Shown in pieces: positions 18,827-24,905 of a stretch of 64,000 nt of DNA (the stretch's first letter is position 1; the number at the start of each line of letters is the position of its first letter). The notes below the pieces were generated by a model. That model saw only the letters and a program-made list of their open reading frames with translations. It had not been told where the DNA came from and searched no databases. Location of the stretch: the NCBI GenBank assembly GCA_965240325.2, contig OZ251245.1, positions 1,116,001 through 1,180,000 on the forward strand, given 5' to 3'. A program made the position numbers and the translations under genes. This DNA comes from Rebecca billardiae RCC1528. Taxonomy: Eukaryota; Protista; Haptophyta.

Positions 18827-19498
18827 TCATGAGCAAAGTCGCTGCATCGTGTGCACCTGCTCTGTGAAGAAGCGCTCTTGCATGCCCCTGATGAACGGGA
18901 ACACGAGCGCACCCAGCGGCCCAGAGCCGCGTGAGACAGACAGCAGGCTGAACGTCACCCTCCCAGTGTGCGGCTCGAGCTCAACTACCATGCGCTCCTC
19001 GCCTGCGAGCCAGTGTCCGCGGAGCGTGCCGTACGCGACAGCCAGACTGTGCCGCGCTCGGTCCGTGTACAGCACCCTGCACGCGTTCACGCACCAAGCG
19101 CCCAGACCGCTTCGCGCGTAGGTCGCGATGACGTCACCTGGATGGGCGCAGGCGTGGCTGAGCGCGATGCCGTTGGTGCGACTGCCGTCGTGCATCCGGA
19201 AGGCAAGCAGCGCCGCAGAGGCCTCGCTCAGGCCGCGCTGCCCCCGAGTGCCCAGCTCGACCTCCTTGTGGATCACGCGCACGCGTCCTTGGCCCCGCGC
19301 GTCAAGTCGAGGTTTGCCACTGCGCGTCATGCCGACGAGCTCATAGTTGTGCCGCGCATCCGCGTTGGTCGTGAGCACGTGTGCAACGTCGTCTGCAGTG
19401 GGACGGCGTGCGAGCACGCGCGTGGCTTCCGCTGCGCGCATGCACGCGGCCGTCAGCAGCAACCGTCTCGTCAAGCTTGCGGTCCGTCGTGCCGCCAT
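18827..19498 (-). CDS. DUF1990 (UPF0548) family protein
   Basis: NYELVGMT, NACRVLY, AYGTLRGHWLAGEERMVV and Q.RF motifs match the DUF1990 pattern; the N-terminus looks like a targeting peptide. Confidence 0.82.
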   Translation of the reverse strand: MAARRTASLTRRLLLTAACMRAAEATRVLARRPTADDVAHVLTTNADARHNYELVGMTRSGKPRLDARGQGRVRVIHKEVELGTRGQRGLSEASAALLAFRMHDGSRTNGIALSHACAHPGDVIATYARSGLGAWCVNACRVLYTDRARHSLAVAYGTLRGHWLAGEERMVVELEPHTGRVTFSLLSVSRGSGPLGALVFPFIRGMQERFFTEQVHTMQRLCS

Positions 19499-19701
19499 CG
19501 TCAAAATACTCGCGTCTATTTTTTTGTAAAATAAACCGTACGGTATTGGTTCAGCACCAGCACGATGGCTGCCGGCGGCGGAGGCATCACAGGCCCCAAC
19601 AACACTCTCAGCCGAGAGGTGGCAATGATGCCACCTCTCTCGGCTGAACTCGGCTTGATGAACAGGTTGACCCGAGACCAAGGCACCTGACACACACCTC
19701 C

Positions 19702-22644
19702 TCAGTGGCCCAGGTCCACCTCGACAGACGAGGCGCTCGTTGCGGAGCCCGTGACCACCGCCATCGCGCCGGTGAGCGTCATGAGCATCCCCGCAGCCTC
19801 AGCCCACGAGGGCAGCGCCTCGCCCATCAGCAGCACGTCGTACGCCGCGGCGAAGAGCGGCTGCAGCAGCACGATCACCGAGATCGTGAGCGGCGGCAGG
19901 TACTTGAGCGAGACGACGAAGCCGAGGTTGCCCAGCGTGTCCACGAGCGCGCATGCAAACAGCATGGCCCACGCGTGCTCCGCGCGCGCCCAGCCAAACA
20001 CGCCGGTGGGCGAGCGATCGAGCGGCGCACCGCCGGCACCGACGCTCACCGCGGGAAGCGCGATCAGCCACGCGATCCCGTTGAGCAGCGGGAAGAGCAC
20101 CGGCGGGTCGACCACCGGCCTGAGCTCCTTGCACAGTAGCATGTAGGCAGCGCCGCCCGCCGAGCCGACAAAAGCGATCACGTTGGCGACCGGTTCACGC
20201 ACCGAGTCCGAACGCGGCCAGAGGTCAATCCCGCCGGCGGCGCCGGCCGCCTCGGCAGCGCCCCCGCCGGCGATATCTGCCCCACCCCCACCGAGCGTGA
20301 GCGCGAGCGGCGCGTTGCCCAGCACGGCTGGCGCCTGCCCCTGCGGCGCCGCGCCCGGCGCGCCGATCGCGAGCAACGCGGTGCCTAGCACGGCGATGAG
20401 CGCGCCGCCGATCTCGAGGGCGCTCGCGCCGAGCCCGCGCGCCAGCCGCACGCCGAGCAGGATGATGGGCGCGAGCGAGGAGAAGAGGAGGGCGTTGGCG
20501 ACCGAGGTGTGCTGCAGCGCGACCGCGTACGGGTAGCAGTGCAGCCACCATGCCGCGCCCGCGCCGAGCAGGCAGGCGAGCGTACGCCGGCTGCGCAGCG
20601 CGGTGCGCAGCCGCGCCGACGTGCCCGCGCGCAGCGCCGCGTATGGAGCGAGCACGAGCGCGGTGCCGCAGAAGCGCCAGCACATCTTCAGCGCGGGGGA
20701 GGCGCGCGTGCCCAGCGCGTCGAACGCGAGGCCTGTCGCCGACGACGTGAGCAGCGAGAAAAGCAGCACCGCGTACCCGACCAGCGGCACGCGCCGCTCC
20801 ATCGTCAGCGTCACGTGCAACCCGTCCGGCGGCGTGCCATCCGGCAGCGCGGCCGTCTTCAGCTGCACGTCGGCGGCGACGCCGGGCGAGTGGCCGGCCG
20901 CGTCGGCGGCGGCGGCGTCGTGCACGTCCACGTCGATCGTCGCGCCCGCCGGCTGCCCCTCGCCCGCCAGCTCGCGCCCGAGTGCGGGCTGCCACTCGAA
21001 GGTGAGCGTGCCTGGCGTGGGCTCAGGCGAGGGGGGCGTGTCATGCAGCCGAGCATACGCGCTGCTGGCGGTGGCTGCGCTCAGCCGGAGCGGAGACGCG
21101 GGCGAGGGCGCGCTCGGCGTGGCGTGGATGGGGGCGCGGGCGAGCGCGACGGGCAGCAGGTGCAGCGGCGTGCCCTCCGCGCCGACGCCCGTGCTGCTGC
21201 TGATCGTCACCGTCTCGATGCCCGATGGTAGCGAGGGCAGCGCCCAGTGCGAGCGCACAGCCGGGATCAGCGGCTCGCGCGGCGCGGCGCTGTTCAGCGC
21301 CTCCGCGGCCGCCTCCGCGCCATCCGCGGTGTCACCGTATGGCCTCCAGCCCTCCTGCGCCGCCTCACCCGCCCAGCCTGAGACGTCCGTCAGCTGCCCT
21401 CGCGGCGTGCTCACGAGCGACTCAGACGCGACGCGGCGGAGAAGCGGCTCGCCCGTCGCCACGCCGTTCGTCTGACCGGCCATACCGACAGGCCCGGCCA
21501 CCGCTGCGAGCGCGTGCTCGGTCGCACGGCGCGGCAGCGCTGCGTACCTCTGCGGCGAGAGGCCGGCTTCGGCGTCGACGGCGGCGAGCTCCTGCGTGCT
21601 CAGCGCGATGCGACGGGCGGCAACCAGCTGCTCCGCCGTCTCCACAGAGCACCAGCGCATTCCGCTCGTCGGCACGGCGACGAGCCCACCCTTGCGCGCG
21701 AGCTCGCTGAGCGCGTCACAGAGCGCAAGCGCAAATGGGGGCGACTCTGCATGGCGCCGCAGCAGGGCGTCGAAGAGGGCCTTGGTCTGCAGCACGAAGA
21801 GGCCGGCCTCGAGTGGGTGTGACGCGTCGACCGCGCGGCCGATCTCCAGCACGCGCCGCGGCTGCGGCTCCGACGCCCTGCCGCCGCGCCAACCCTCCTC
21901 GCCTTCGCACGCGACTCGGACGCACGTGGGCGCGAGTGCGCCGAGCGCGCGGCGCGCGTCCGGCTCGACGAGCACGCGGCCGACGCAGCCCGCGGGCAGG
22001 GCGGTGGCGATGAGGCGGTGCACGAGCGCGCTTTCAAAGATGTGGTCGGACGTGCTCAGCAGCACCTGCGATTCTGCCTCGCCGTGCGTGCCCTCGCCGT
22101 CGCCCTCGCCGAGCAGCGCGCTGTGCGCGTGCAGCAGCGACTGCGCGTGGCACCCGGTATAATTCGGGCCGAGGTCGACGACGTCGAGCTGCACGTAGCG
22201 CGCAACGGCGGACTTCTCAAGCGTCCGCTTGATCAGCATGCCCACGGGCCCACCGACTACGACGACGACGCGCGTGATGCCCGCGTCCGCCAGTTGGCGC
22301 AGGCTCTGCACGAGCAGCGGGTAGAAGCCGATCCGGAGGAGCTGGCGGGGGAGGCCGTCCTTGCCGAGGGCGGCAGAGCGCGAGACCGTGGATATGAGCG
22401 CCGTCGTCACGCGCGCGCGCACGGGGCGCGGCATGTATGCCATGGTCGAGTGCCACCGCGCGGAGTTCACGGGCATTGCCGAGCTCGCGAGCGCGTTCGC
22501 GCGCTCCGCAAAAAGCGTGCGCGGACCGGAGAGCTGGAGGAAGAGCTCGTTGCGGGTGCAGCCGAGTCGTCGCGCGACATCGTTCGCGTCGACTGTCCAC
22601 GCGCGCCGCGCGTCGCCAGCGGGGCTCTCCATGTTCACGTCCAT
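19702..22644 (-). CDS. Fusion protein: N-terminal nucleotidyltransferase-like (GT-A fold) domain plus C-terminal EamA/DMT transporter
   Basis: Single uninterrupted 980-aa ORF. N-part: PRQLLRIGFYPLLVQSLRQLADAGITRVVVVVG, STSDHIF, EAGLF, LCDAL, WCSVET. C-part: about 10 hydrophobic helices with SVANALLFSSLAP and LKYLPPLTISVIVLLQPLFA...GEALP. Confidence 0.85.
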   Translation of the reverse strand: MDVNMESPAGDARRAWTVDANDVARRLGCTRNELFLQLSGPRTLFAERANALASSAMPVNSARWHSTMAYMPRPVRARVTTALISTVSRSAALGKDGLPRQLLRIGFYPLLVQSLRQLADAGITRVVVVVGGPVGMLIKRTLEKSAVARYVQLDVVDLGPNYTGCHAQSLLHAHSALLGEGDGEGTHGEAESQVLLSTSDHIFESALVHRLIATALPAGCVGRVLVEPDARRALGALAPTCVRVACEGEEGWRGGRASEPQPRRVLEIGRAVDASHPLEAGLFVLQTKALFDALLRRHAESPPFALALCDALSELARKGGLVAVPTSGMRWCSVETAEQLVAARRIALSTQELAAVDAEAGLSPQRYAALPRRATEHALAAVAGPVGMAGQTNGVATGEPLLRRVASESLVSTPRGQLTDVSGWAGEAAQEGWRPYGDTADGAEAAAEALNSAAPREPLIPAVRSHWALPSLPSGIETVTISSSTGVGAEGTPLHLLPVALARAPIHATPSAPSPASPLRLSAATASSAYARLHDTPPSPEPTPGTLTFEWQPALGRELAGEGQPAGATIDVDVHDAAAADAAGHSPGVAADVQLKTAALPDGTPPDGLHVTLTMERRVPLVGYAVLLFSLLTSSATGLAFDALGTRASPALKMCWRFCGTALVLAPYAALRAGTSARLRTALRSRRTLACLLGAGAAWWLHCYPYAVALQHTSVANALLFSSLAPIILLGVRLARGLGASALEIGGALIAVLGTALLAIGAPGAAPQGQAPAVLGNAPLALTLGGGGADIAGGGAAEAAGAAGGIDLWPRSDSVREPVANVIAFVGSAGGAAYMLLCKELRPVVDPPVLFPLLNGIAWLIALPAVSVGAGGAPLDRSPTGVFGWARAEHAWAMLFACALVDTLGNLGFVVSLKYLPPLTISVIVLLQPLFAAAYDVLLMGEALPSWAEAAGMLMTLTGAMAVVTGSATSASSVEVDLGH

Positions 22645-22868: not shown

Positions 22869-24905
22869 ATGGCCGATGCTCCCGACGAGTCGTGGGGGGA
22901 TGGCTCCCTCGACTCGGCCGAGCTCGATCGTCTCGCGTCGGCGGCGGAAGCGGCCGACGAGCTCGATGACAGCTCGTCGCCGCTCAAGTCGTCCGTCCGT
23001 TCCGCGGAGACGTACACCGAGGGCTCGCCCTCACCGGCGCTGCGCCGCATCGGCTCCCAGCCCGTGGAGGAATCGGGCGACGACGATCTGAACGACCGGG
23101 ACCGACCGTCGACGGCTGAGTCGTACGGGGCGAGCGACGCTCGGGACGACGAGCTGGATGAGGACAACGAGGTCACCCATGGCGGCCGCGCGCGCAGCGG
23201 CGGGCTGAGCAGGGGCGTGAGCTCCGCGAGCGAGCTTGGCAGCCCCTCGCGCTGGGCGTCCGCGCGCGGCGAGGACGACGGCGAGGACGACTACAGAGGG
23301 GACGAGAACGCGGAGGCGGCTGACGAAGACGAGCGCGAGGGCCGTGGTGAGGATGGCGTGCTGGAGGCTGACGGTGTGGACGGCGCAGACGAGGCCGAGC
23401 GGGTTGATCTTGCCGAGCGCGCGCGTGATGACGCGGATGAGGAGGCAGAGGAGGCGGAGGAGGTGGCGGCGGAGGAGGACGAGGAGGACGAGGAGGAGAG
23501 GATGGACGACTACGCCGATGGTTCGAGAGGGCGCGGTGGGGACGCCGCCGCCGCGGGGCTCGAGTCACAGCTCTCCGAGATGCGCGCGCTCCTCACAGCG
23601 ATGCAGGCGCAGCAGCGCAAGCTGGCGGCACAGATGCGCCAGGCGCAAAGGGAGGCTCGCGACGCGCAGCAGGAGGCCGCCGGGGCGCGCGCCCTCGCGA
23701 GCAGGCTCGAGCGCGAGCGCGGCGCGGCAGCCGACGACGAGCGTCGCGCGTGCGAGAGCGCGTCGTTGCCCGAACGGGGAAGCCCGCCTGGCGCACGCGA
23801 GCCCTCAGTGCCGCGCACGCCCGACGGACAGCTGCGGGCCTCGGGCGCGCGCAGCGATGGCTCTGCCAGCCCGCCGCCGCCACCGGCCGTGGGAGGCGCA
23901 GCGGAGGGTGAGCCGCCGAGCGCGGCGGCGGATGCCCTGCCGGGCGCAGCGGACGGCGGCATGCGCGAGACGGACGCTGCCCCAGCGGACGCCGCCTCGG
24001 AGCAACCTCGATCTCAGCAGCCCACCCTGAGCCCGCGAGCTCGCGCACCGGCGCCGGCCGCGACAACGGACGCCCTAGAGGGGGCCGAAGGCGCGAGGCA
24101 GGGCGCGGCGGCAGGCAGCCCGCCAAGGGCGACGCGCCCGCCCTGGCGCGCCTCCATCCTCGACGAATGGCGCTCTTACATCGACGCCGACACCCCCTCT
24201 CACGCGCGCGCCGCGCCGCCGAGGCCGCCGCTTGTCGCCCTCGCTGTCCTCGAGGCGGGCGGCCAATCGAGCGAGGCGCGCGGGCGCGCTGACGAGCAGT
24301 GGGGGGCACGGGGCGGCGTGGACCGCGCGTCGTGGGCCGAGCTCGAGGGCACGCCGCTCGGTGGTGTCGGGGCGCAGAGGCCGTTGCCTTCGGCGCACGT
24401 TTTCGGCGGCCATGCCACGCCAACGGCCCCTCCGCCGGCCTGGCAGCACACGCGCCCCGCCGCCGCGTGGGGTGCGGCCGCGGGCCCTGCGGGGCCGCGC
24501 TCCGCCCGGCTGCTGGACGAGTGGGTGGCATATCTCGAGACGGACGACTGCGCGCAGGCGAGTAAGCTGGCGCCGGTGATGCCGACGCTCGTGCAACGGG
24601 CCGTGCGCAGCGCGTCCGCTGCGCATCGCCCACACGGCATCCACGTGCCTTACGCCTGCCCGTCCACCGGATTATTGCCTACCCACGACTCCGGACGGTA
24701 CGCCACACCCGCGGGCGCGGCACCCGGTGGGTTTGACTTTGGCTGCACTGGGGCGCAGCATATGCCGGTCAGCGTCGGGCAGTGGAGCTACCCGTGCAGC
24801 TGGACGCAGCCCTGCGGCGGCGGCTCAACATCGGCGAGCGCCGTGAGGCCTGCGGCGCCGCCAGGCCCAGGGCCAGGCTGCACGCAGGCCGACTTCGTTA
24901 GTTAG
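22869..24905 (+). CDS. Hypothetical acidic, disordered protein with a short coiled coil
   Basis: 678-aa ORF with an Asp/Glu-rich N-terminus and LESQLSEMRALL...QREARD coiled coil; the 3' end is uncertain. Confidence 0.65.
   Translation: MADAPDESWGDGSLDSAELDRLASAAEAADELDDSSSPLKSSVRSAETYTEGSPSPALRRIGSQPVEESGDDDLNDRDRPSTAESYGASDARDDELDEDNEVTHGGRARSGGLSRGVSSASELGSPSRWASARGEDDGEDDYRGDENAEAADEDEREGRGEDGVLEADGVDGADEAERVDLAERARDDADEEAEEAEEVAAEEDEEDEEERMDDYADGSRGRGGDAAAAGLESQLSEMRALLTAMQAQQRKLAAQMRQAQREARDAQQEAAGARALASRLERERGAAADDERRACESASLPERGSPPGAREPSVPRTPDGQLRASGARSDGSASPPPPPAVGGAAEGEPPSAAADALPGAADGGMRETDAAPADAASEQPRSQQPTLSPRARAPAPAATTDALEGAEGARQGAAAGSPPRATRPPWRASILDEWRSYIDADTPSHARAAPPRPPLVALAVLEAGGQSSEARGRADEQWGARGGVDRASWAELEGTPLGGVGAQRPLPSAHVFGGHATPTAPPPAWQHTRPAAAWGAAAGPAGPRSARLLDEWVAYLETDDCAQASKLAPVMPTLVQRAVRSASAAHRPHGIHVPYACPSTGLLPTHDSGRYATPAGAAPGGFDFGCTGAQHMPVSVGQWSYPCSWTQPCGGGSTSASAVRPAAPPGPGPGCTQADFVS

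What the first reader, a model, noticed from the sequence alone, without database searches (positions are those of the whole stretch)
19702..22644. Degenerate nucleotidyltransferase fused to an EamA/DMT transporter: candidate metabolite-gated transporter
Seen: one intron-free ORF joins a GT-A nucleotidyltransferase-like domain, a ~270-aa disordered linker and a ~10-TM EamA transporter. The canonical (L)AAGxGxR...PK signature reads ISTVSRSAAL...PR, and W.DVDT reads WCSVET, while SDH(I/L)F is kept. Known: SDH-type motifs occur in inositol-1-phosphate cytidylyltransferase-like enzymes, and bacterial lic operons pair LicC (cytidylyltransferase) with LicB (EamA choline permease) as separate genes. 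Inference: this is either a channelled import-and-activate module for a lipid head group or osmolyte, or a transporter regulated by a catalytically dead nucleotide-sensing domain.
Basis: partly seen in the sequence, partly recalled or inferred. Interest (0 to 1): 0.75.

Follow-up and report, generated by a model that had tools for sequence, protein, structure and literature searches.

The report
Cytidylyltransferase-like domain fused to DMT transporter
This is a real single gene that joins an enzyme-like domain (the kind that attaches a nucleotide to small phosphorylated head groups) to a membrane transporter. The same design is kept in haptophyte and pelagophyte algae and in oomycetes, and I found no study of it, so it is a good but still untested lead to a "transport-and-activate" or self-sensing transporter.

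Summary
Window 19702-22644 (-) is one 980-aa ORF with three parts:
- an N-terminal domain (residues ~76-355) with the fold of the sugar/phospho-alcohol nucleotidyltransferases (NTases): AF2 pLDDT 82, VIA-align Z 23-25, and best sequence match to inositol-1-phosphate cytidylyltransferase (IPCT)
- a linker of about 245 aa rich in Ala, Pro and Gly
- a 10-TM EamA/DMT transporter of the DME type.

The fusion is not an artefact. GC3 stays at 0.78-0.98 along the whole ORF. Sixty of 158 fetched relatives carry both domains, including one transcript-derived ORF. Named members come from oomycetes, a pelagophyte and a haptophyte.

"Degenerate" is only partly right. The canonical GxGxR...PK loop is missing in the whole family and is replaced by a conserved A-A-x-R-P...P-K. 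The query keeps every family-conserved functional position, with Lys100 changed to Arg. Some sister proteins have truly eroded motifs.

Function is untested. I favour cargo-coupled nucleotidyl activation (about 0.4) over a GMPPA-like sensor domain (about 0.3). I found no paper on this fusion.

First readers of this scan noted four similar NTase-EamA genes elsewhere in this genome. None of those notes shows a follow-up.

The parts
19702..22644 (-). Complete single-exon coding sequence, 980 aa plus stop
   Evidence: ORF list. GC3 is 0.78-0.98 throughout. Both ends match the ends of homologues. tblastn hits of relatives are collinear in one frame.
22519..22605 (-). Conserved N-terminal helical motif (residues 14-42, RAWTVDANDVARRLGCTRNELFLQLSGPR)
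   Evidence: Family consensus is VDLxxLAxLxGCSxxEL. AF2 predicts helices at 20-27 and 31-39, with pLDDT 69-86 over residues 11-30. The same motif is the only part shared with NTase-less paralogues (hhalign).
21580..22419 (-). Nucleotidyltransferase-fold (IPCT/LicC/PntC-like) domain, residues 76-355
   Evidence: AF2 pLDDT 82.4. VIA-align Z 24.9 to PntC 6pd2, 24.1 to IPCT 4jd0 and 23.1 to IPCT-DIPPS 4mnd. Foldseek E about 1e-12. Profile against PDB: IPCT at E 1.5e-15. Pfam NTP_transf_3 matches 36 of 38 relatives, but the query itself is below threshold.
22339..22401 (-). Nucleotide-binding signature loop in its family-specific form (residues 82-102; R89, P99, R100)
   Evidence: Translation. Column counts over 61 domains: R89 in 50, P99 in 59, position 100 is K in 49 and R in 8. 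The canonical GxG is absent in the whole family.
22033..22050 (-). SDHIFE motif (D200, H201), at the position of IPCT's GDHVY
   Evidence: Translation. D200 in 55 of 61 and H201 in 51 of 61. It aligns with IPCT 'GDHVY'.
21637..21654 (-). WCSVET motif (W331, E335, T336), at the position of the canonical W.DVDT
   Evidence: Translation. W in 58, E in 54 and T in 53 of 61. It aligns with IPCT 'WMDVDT'.
20839..21579 (-). Low-complexity linker, residues 356-602, ending in a conserved pre-TM1 strand-like motif (...HVTLTMERRVP)
   Evidence: Composition: A 21%, P 11%, G 9%. No Pfam hit. Not alignable among relatives except for the last ~30 residues. GC3 is 0.84-0.98.
19714..20838 (-). 10-TM DMT/EamA transporter domain, residues 603-977
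   Evidence: Pfam EamA, two stretches, E 2e-9 for the whole protein and 9.4e-11 for the domain alone. Family alignment A2 has invariant P620, W656 and R657. NCBIfam TIGR00950 matches 15 of 30 relatives.
20194..20361 (-). Gly/Ala-rich central loop between the two EamA halves (residues 762-817), longer than in most relatives
   Evidence: Alignment A2, columns 301-360. Composition: A 27%, G 23%. GC3 is lowest here (0.78-0.86). An unspliced in-frame intron cannot be excluded without RNA.

Best explanation
What it is (shown): a genuine single-exon gene for a member of a conserved, uncharacterised protist protein family. The cytosolic N-terminus carries a short helical motif and then a nucleotidyltransferase-fold domain. 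That domain belongs to the small phospho-alcohol/phosphonate cytidylyltransferase group (IPCT, LicC, PntC; 'COG1213-like'). A flexible linker tethers it to a 10-TM DME-type DMT (EamA) transporter.

How it most likely works (inferred):
1. The N-domain still binds a nucleotide and a small phosphorylated or phosphonate head group.
2. It acts on the compound that the transporter carries.
3. The cargo is therefore converted to its CDP/CMP- (or other NDP-) activated form at the cytosolic mouth of the carrier.
This would be a one-chain version of the bacterial LicB + LicC logic, or of vectorial activation.
For: Real gene and real fusion:
- Searches support a single coding frame.
- The exhaustive search gave 430 relatives at E<1e-3 and 24 at E<1e-30.
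- 60 of 158 fetched proteins carry both domains.
- One of them, P0156, is an MMETSP transcript ORF with the N-domain at 146-450 and the transporter at 722-1079.
- Named members come from Plasmopara, Albugo, Achlya, Aphanomyces, Chrysophaeum and Prymnesium.

Fold and nearest enzymes.

A working ligand site is likely:
- The positions that in canonical enzymes hold the NTP phosphates, the metal and the phospho-substrate are kept in 80-100% of 61 family domains (R270 in 77%, counting Lys). These are R89, K100, D200, R270, E/D279-A-G281 and E335.
- All of them are present in the query, with K100 changed to R.
- The N-domain is as conserved as the transporter: 24-38% against 23-36% identity to the query.

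Topology: the ERRVP motif just before TM1 and the lack of a signal peptide place the N-domain in the cytosol. This rests on the positive-inside rule and is an inference.

Possible anionic cargo: an invariant Trp-Arg in TM2 and a conserved Asp in TM8 would suit a charged or zwitterionic cargo. This too is an inference.
Against: - No activity, ligand or cargo is known for any member.
- The glycine-rich GxG loop that wraps the NTP phosphates is absent in the whole family.
- The query misses the Pfam cut-off for NTP_transf_3 (19.9 bits against 27).
- Sister proteins P0001, P0002 and P0004 have lost R89, D200/H201, R270 and E279, yet keep the fold and an intact transporter.
- A paralogous group has the same transporter and the same N-terminal motif with no NTase domain at all. 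The transporter therefore does not need NTase catalysis.
- Cytidylyltransferases need a phosphorylated substrate. DME carriers are not known for such cargo, and no kinase is part of the chain.
- No RNA evidence exists for this organism.
Confidence: 0.4

Rival explanations
1. Sensor or regulatory pseudoenzyme. The N-domain binds a nucleotide-activated metabolite or an NTP but does not turn it over. It gates or tunes the transporter, possibly through dimerisation. Catalytically weak NTase paralogues regulate partners in this way: GMPPA for GMPPB, GalF for GalU, and eIF2B gamma/epsilon.
For: - The family-wide loss of the GxG loop parallels the altered loop of GMPPA (my own knowledge).
- GMPPB, eIF2B epsilon and eIF2B gamma are among the profile's PDB matches, at E 2e-12 to 4e-6.
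- Sister proteins have eroded catalytic positions but still keep the domain fused to an intact transporter.
- NTase-less paralogues share the N-terminal motif, the long cytosolic arm and the same transporter type. This suggests the arm is an accessory, regulatory region.
Against: Most family members, including the query, keep the Arg, Lys, Asp, Arg/Lys and Glu positions used for catalysis in canonical enzymes. A pure sensor would be expected to relax some of these. The closest sequence relatives are true enzymes (IPCT).
Confidence: 0.3
2. Synthesise-and-export. The N-domain makes an activated head group (CDP-X or NDP-X) in the cytosol. The DMT domain then moves that product across an endomembrane or the plasma membrane for lumenal or extracellular lipid or glycan decoration, as nucleotide-sugar transporters (also DMT) do for cytosolic NDP-sugars.
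For: - The DMT superfamily includes nucleotide-sugar and triose-phosphate carriers (established knowledge).
- The invariant TM2 Arg could bind phosphate.
- The best-matching enzyme, IPCT, is naturally fused to the membrane enzyme that consumes its product (4mnd).
Against: The transporter matches EamA/DME models (TIGR00950, YddG, YedA), not the nucleotide-sugar or TPT families. No Pfam TPT or Nuc_sug_transp hit appeared.
Confidence: 0.15
3. Annotation artefact. Two neighbouring genes, or two exons with an unspliced in-frame intron, read as one ORF because stop codons are rare at 75% GC.
For: The linker alone stays open in 4.4% of composition-matched shuffles. No RNA run was listed. The exact 980-aa product is not on record in the gene collection.
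Against: - GC3 is far above GC2 in the linker, just as in the two domains.
- The same N-domain-linker-transporter order occurs in 60 fetched relatives from several lineages, one of them transcript-derived.
- The same order is found as uninterrupted ORFs on genomic contigs of the nearest relatives.
Confidence: 0.03

Closest known systems
IPCT and the bifunctional IPCT/DIPPS of hyperthermophiles (PDB 2xme, 4jd0, 4mnd; NCBIfam NF041135)
   Same: It is the best sequence match of the N-domain family: E 1.5e-15 over nearly the whole domain, and 33 of 38 members hit NF041135. The fold is shared, with Z 23-24. The DH(I/V)(F/Y), IG(R/K) and W...(D/E)T motifs are shared. In IPCT/DIPPS the soluble cytidylyltransferase is likewise fused N-terminally to a membrane domain.
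   Different: The membrane partner here is a 10-TM DMT transporter, not a CDP-alcohol phosphotransferase. The GxGTR loop is replaced by A-A-x-R-P. The query scores 25.8 bits against an equivalog cut-off of 580. The organisms are eukaryotic protists, in which CDP-inositol is not a known metabolite (my own knowledge).
LicB (DMT choline permease) with LicA and LicC (CTP:phosphocholine cytidylyltransferase, PDB 1jyk) of Streptococcus/Haemophilus lic operons
   Same: The same two protein superfamilies cooperate: a DMT carrier brings in a head group that a small GT-A cytidylyltransferase activates. ESM Atlas shape neighbours include 'phosphocholine cytidylyltransferase' and 'choline kinase (COG1213)' clusters. 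JGI names relative P0121 'DMT-like permease/choline kinase'.
   Different: In bacteria these are separate genes, and a kinase (LicA) is needed between them. LicC is only a weak partial match (E 4.3e-4, 38 residues). LicB was not matched by the transporter profile at E up to 10.
PntC-AEPT (phosphonate-specific cytidylyltransferase fused to AEP transaminase, PDB 6pd1/6pd2)
   Same: It has the top structural score (Z 24.9, rmsd 2.7 over 235 residues), within about 1 Z of the UGPase, GlmU and IPCT rows and so tied with them. It is another case of this NTase type fused to a pathway partner. It acts directly on a phosphonate, so no kinase step would be needed after import.
   Different: The sequence match is weak (E 5.7e-4, partial). 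The fusion partner is a soluble aminotransferase.
Non-catalytic NTase-fold regulators: GMPPA, GalF, eIF2B gamma/epsilon
   Same: They have the same fold and altered signature loops. They act by binding ligand or partner rather than by catalysis. eIF2B subunits match the family profile at E 2e-6 to 4e-6, and GMPPA's catalytic partner GMPPB at E 2e-12; GMPPA itself was not among the 60 rows shown.
   Different: None of them is fused to a transporter. The family here keeps more of the catalytic-type residues.
10-TMS drug/metabolite exporter (DME) family of the DMT superfamily (TIGR00950 '2A78'; YddG, YedA)
   Same: Two EamA repeats and 10 TM helices. 15 of 30 family transporter domains match TIGR00950 (best E 2.6e-15), and two match YddG.
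   Different: The query's own domain matches no NCBIfam model. No solved DMT matches by sequence. The family has its own pre-TM1 ERRVP motif, an invariant TM2 Trp-Arg and a long cytosolic N-terminal arm.

Membership tests
EamA / DMT superfamily (Pfam PF00892) | Score above the Pfam gathering threshold, two EamA repeats | tested here: met
   38.3 bits against 28.2, two stretches. The domain alone scores 42.6 bits.
EamA / DMT superfamily (Pfam PF00892) | Ten transmembrane helices arranged 5+5 | tested here: met
   Hydropathy peaks and alignment A2 give five helices on each side of the central loop. No 3D model of this domain was made.
NTP_transferase / NTP_transf_3 (Pfam PF00483, PF12804) | Score above the Pfam gathering threshold | tested here: not met
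   The query scores 19.9 bits against a cut-off of 27. 36 of 38 relatives match at E<0.01. Only P0019 is shown above the cut-off (30.9 bits); P0003 falls just below at 26.6.
NTP_transferase / NTP_transf_3 (Pfam PF00483, PF12804) | GT-A-like Rossmann fold of sugar/phospho-alcohol nucleotidyltransferases | tested here: met
   AF2 pLDDT 82.4. Foldseek probability 1.0, TM up to 0.80 by target. VIA-align Z 23-25 over residues 76-355.
NTP_transferase / NTP_transf_3 (Pfam PF00483, PF12804) | Signature G-x-G-(T/S)-R-x(4-10)-P-K | tested here: not met
   The query reads S-T-V-S-R-x9-P-R. The family consensus is A-A-x-R-P-x8-9-P-K, so Arg and Pro-Lys are kept but the two Gly are absent.
NTP_transferase / NTP_transf_3 (Pfam PF00483, PF12804) | Nucleotidyl transfer activity | not testable with these tools
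   This needs an enzyme assay.
IPCT (CTP:inositol-1-phosphate cytidylyltransferase; NCBIfam NF041135) | Equivalog score cut-off of 580 bits and a fused DIPP synthase domain | tested here: not met
   25.8 bits over 87 residues for the query. No CDP-OH_P_transf domain is present.
LicB-type choline permease | Sequence similarity to LicB | tested here: inconclusive
   The family profile found no solved DMT at all at E up to 10.
The protist NTase-EamA fusion family defined here (alignments A1, A2, A4) | N-terminal VDL..LA..GC motif, A-A-x-R-P...PK, DH(I/L)F(D/E), IGR, EAGL, W..ET, ERRVP before TM1, and WR in TM2, in this order on one chain | tested here: met
   The query matches the N-domain HMM at E 7e-96 and the transporter HMM at E 4e-96. 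All key residues are present except K100, which is R. It sits in a clade with 99% SH-aLRT support together with P0001-P0004.

The most novel reading that the evidence does not exclude
The family performs vectorial nucleotidylation, a eukaryotic form of group translocation. A small phosphorylated or phosphonate head group (for example 2-aminoethylphosphonate or phosphocholine) enters through the DMT pore and is converted to its CMP/CDP-activated form by the tethered domain. Motif-eroded paralogues in the same cell would act as non-catalytic partners, as GMPPA does for GMPPB.
Probability: 0.2. Interest if true: 0.8.

Novelty: new variant of a known kind. Interest (0 to 1): 0.55.

Why it matters
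Both halves belong to well-known superfamilies. Their union on one chain is the kind of 'Rosetta-stone' link that assigns function.

- It predicts that a DME-type carrier and an IPCT/LicC/PntC-type cytidylyltransferase work on the same small molecule.
- The family occurs in ecologically important algae (haptophytes, pelagophytes) and in oomycetes, which include major plant pathogens. In all of these it is annotated only as 'DMT superfamily' or 'MobA-like NTP transferase'.
- If the domain is active, it would show a glycine-free variant of the NTase signature loop and a direct coupling of transport to head-group activation.
- If it is inactive, it would be a new ligand-sensing appendage on a DMT carrier.

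Either result is directly testable with a simple enzyme assay and an uptake assay.

Tried and rejected
- Word-index protein searches found no family member. This held for the whole protein, the N-domain and the family alignment. The alignment search returned only three IPCT/DIPPS proteins. The exhaustive HMMER search was needed.
- A single-sequence AF2 model of the N-domain was useless (pLDDT 38).
- phmmer of the N-domain alone against PDB gave nothing.
- The transporter profile against PDB gave nothing, so closeness to LicB, YddG or TPT could not be ranked.
I could not ask whether prokaryotes pair the nearest NTase with an EamA gene.
- ESM Atlas feature search with the full protein gave no usable hit.
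- The exact protein is not on record in the gene collection.
- No RNA run was listed.
- Tandem repeats in the ORF are trivial.
- There is no second copy in the window.
- I considered and rejected an artefactual read-through of two genes (see the rivals).
- I rejected membership of the IPCT equivalog and of the nucleotide-sugar/TPT transporter families.
Full report
**1. The observation**

The ORF listing gives one ORF at 19702..22644 on the minus strand, 980 aa, ATG to TGA.

The window is very GC-rich, 0.60-0.81, so long open frames are cheap here. I tested this in four ways:
- None of 2000 base shuffles of the ORF stays open for 980 codons. The 247-codon linker alone stays open in 4.4% of shuffles.
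- GC at codon position 3 is 0.78-0.98 in every 50-codon window. This includes the linker (0.84-0.98). GC2 is 0.38-0.72. That is the pattern of coding sequence in one continuous frame.
- Relatives hit the ORF collinearly in that single frame.
- The N- and C-termini coincide with those of homologues.

The upstream neighbour is a divergently oriented ORF that starts at 22869. This leaves a 224-bp gap of lower GC in front of the ATG.

**2. The two domains**

Pfam finds EamA above threshold, with two repeats. Hydropathy and the family alignment give 5+5 helices.

The N-terminal part is only sub-threshold on its own:
- NTP_transf_3 at 19.9 bits against a cut-off of 27
- IPCT/DIPPS at E 1e-4 over 88 residues
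- nothing against PDB
- a useless single-sequence AF2 model.

An ESM Atlas feature search already pointed to NTP-transferase clusters (score 0.96).

With an alignment of 38 family N-domains (A1) the picture becomes clear:
- AF2 gives pLDDT 82.4 and pTM 0.78.
- Foldseek gives E about 1e-12 to 1e-13 and probability 1.0 to UGPases, IPCT, MurU, GMPPB and RmlA.
- VIA-align gives Z 24.9 (PntC), 24.1 (IPCT 4jd0) and 23.1 (IPCT-DIPPS 4mnd) over residues 76-355.
- The A1 profile's best solved matches are IPCT 2xme (E 1.5e-15, nearly full length) and IPCT-DIPPS 4mnd (E 2.9e-15). GMPPB, GlmU, UGPases and eIF2B epsilon/gamma follow. LicC and PntC match only weakly.
- NCBIfam agrees: IPCT/DIPPS matches 33 of 38 members, best E 2.4e-24.
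- Atlas shape neighbours are bacterial NTP_transf_3 domains fused to aminotransferases (PntC-AEPT-like) or to CDP-alcohol phosphotransferase (IPCT-DIPPS). 'Choline kinase (COG1213)' and 'phosphocholine cytidylyltransferase' clusters also appear.

The N-domain therefore has the GT-A-like nucleotidyltransferase fold. It sits nearest to the small phospho-alcohol/phosphonate cytidylyltransferases.

**3. The fusion is a conserved family**

The word-index searches found no family member. The exhaustive HMMER search found 430 proteins at E<1e-3 and 24 at E<1e-30.
- With HMMs built from A1 and A2, 60 of the 158 fetched proteins carry both domains in the same order.
- Named members are from the oomycetes Plasmopara halstedii, Albugo laibachii, Achlya hypogyna and Aphanomyces stellatus, the pelagophyte Chrysophaeum taylorii and the haptophyte Prymnesium parvum. 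Their names are only 'DMT superfamily', 'MobA-like NTP transferase domain-containing' or 'hypothetical'.
- One member, P0156, is an MMETSP transcript ORF with both domains. In at least one relative the fusion is therefore one message.
- The nearest relatives, P0001-P0004 (36-40% identity over matched stretches), are uninterrupted ORFs on genomic contigs of about 66% GC. Two of them come from one sample.
- A quick ML tree has four starred groups besides the query's: a group holding the Prymnesium cluster, one holding the four oomycetes, one holding Chrysophaeum, and P0015/20/24/27/49. The query sits in a clade with 99% SH-aLRT support together with P0001-P0004 (quick search only, several long branches).

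I found no paper on this architecture. The library lacks most subscription journals.

**4. Is the N-domain 'degenerate'?**

Measured against the textbook signature, yes: the GxG of GxG(T/S)R is gone. But this holds for the whole family, which has its own conserved version.

| Query position | Count among 61 N-domains |
|---|---|
| R89 | 50 |
| P99 | 59 |
| 100 | K in 49, R in 8 (query has R) |
| S169 | 56 |
| D200 | 55 |
| H201 | 51 |
| G269 | 52 |
| R270 | R in 40, K in 7 |
| 279 | E or D in 54 |
| G281 | 61 |
| W331 | 58 |
| E335 | 54 |
| T336 | 53 |

In the HMMER alignment to IPCT these columns fall on PK, GDHVY, IGK, D-T-G and WMDVDT. From my own knowledge of RmlA/GlmU-type enzymes, these are the positions that contact the NTP phosphates, the metal and the phospho-substrate.

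The query keeps every one of them, with Lys100 changed to Arg. It is a regular family member, not a decayed one.

True erosion exists next door:
- P0002 and P0004 read -/E/R/A-or-S/L at positions 89/200/201/270/279.
- P0001 has lost R89, K100, R270, E279 and E335.
- All three still match the domain HMM at E 1e-74 to 1e-80 and keep the transporter's invariant residues.

**5. The transporter and the arm**
- Fifteen of 30 family transporter domains match TIGR00950 (carboxylate/amino acid/amine transporter, DME family). Two match YddG. None matches nucleotide-sugar or TPT models.
- No solved DMT, LicB included, is matched by sequence.
- Family-specific features are a strand-like stretch ending in (V/M)ERRVP just before TM1, an invariant Trp-Arg in TM2 and a conserved Asp in TM8.
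- The basic ERRVP motif and the absence of a signal peptide place the N-terminal arm in the cytosol. This is an inference.
- A separate group of 22 representative proteins has the same transporter type and the same ~26-residue N-terminal motif (VDLxxLSxLVGxxExE) but no NTase domain in between. hhalign matches only that motif.

**6. Mechanism**

Shown: one gene; a cytosolic NTase-fold domain with a conserved ligand-site pattern; a DME-type carrier; and conservation of the union across distant protists.

Inferred: the two parts act on the same small molecule.
- I favour cargo-coupled activation (0.4), because the catalytic-type residues are conserved as strongly as the transporter.
- The sensor or pseudoenzyme reading (0.3) is supported by the missing glycine loop, the eroded sister proteins and the NTase-less paralogues.
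- Synthesise-and-export (0.15) fits the IPCT-DIPPS precedent but not the transporter subtype.
- An artefact is unlikely (0.03).

**7. Earlier notes of this scan**

First readers noted four other NTase-EamA fusion ORFs on other pieces of this genome. One of them was described as having eroded motifs. None of these notes shows a follow-up, and I could not read those pieces. They fit the multi-paralogue picture seen in the relatives' samples. Another note calls the organism a GC-rich haptophyte-type alga. I did not test that.

**8. Limits**
- No RNA run was listed, so the single transcript is inferred for this organism.
- No model of the transporter or of the full chain was made.
- The taxonomy of most relatives is unknown, because they come from Logan or ENA contigs.
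- The tree is a quick search.

Noticed in passing
P0060, P0032, P0034 and others (alignment A3, 22 proteins): A paralogous protein group has the same EamA subtype and shares only the ~26-residue N-terminal motif (VDLxxLSxLVGxxExE) with the fusion family. No NTase domain lies between motif and transporter. The motif itself has no known family.
   Followed up: partly
P0001, P0002, P0004 (loci L001:166-2823, L003:1501-5139, L004:450-4058): The query's nearest relatives keep the NTase fold and an intact transporter, but have lost several catalytic-type residues (R89, D200/H201, R270, E279). P0001 and P0004 come from the same sample, so intact-looking and eroded paralogues may coexist in one organism.
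   Followed up: partly
window 20194-20361 (-): A Gly/Ala-rich insertion in the central loop between the two EamA halves is about 30 residues longer than in most relatives. It has the lowest GC3 of the ORF (0.78-0.86). It is either a lineage-specific loop expansion or an unspliced in-frame intron.
   Followed up: no
window 18827-19693 (-): The downstream neighbour on the same strand encodes a DUF1990 protein (Pfam E 9e-25). Its likely true start is an internal Met followed by an Arg/Ala-rich stretch that looks like a transit peptide.
   Followed up: no
window 22869-24905 (+): A divergently transcribed 678-aa ORF starts 224 bp upstream of the fusion gene. It is very acidic and low in complexity at its N-terminus, Ala/Pro-rich later, and has no Pfam hit.
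   Followed up: no
other pieces of this genome (scan notes s1-367914, s1-372082, s1-341276, s1-336859): First readers listed four further NTase-EamA fusion ORFs (2.9-3.7 kb) elsewhere in the same genome. This suggests a gene family of at least five members. One of them, at 2946 letters, is almost the same length as this gene.
   Followed up: no
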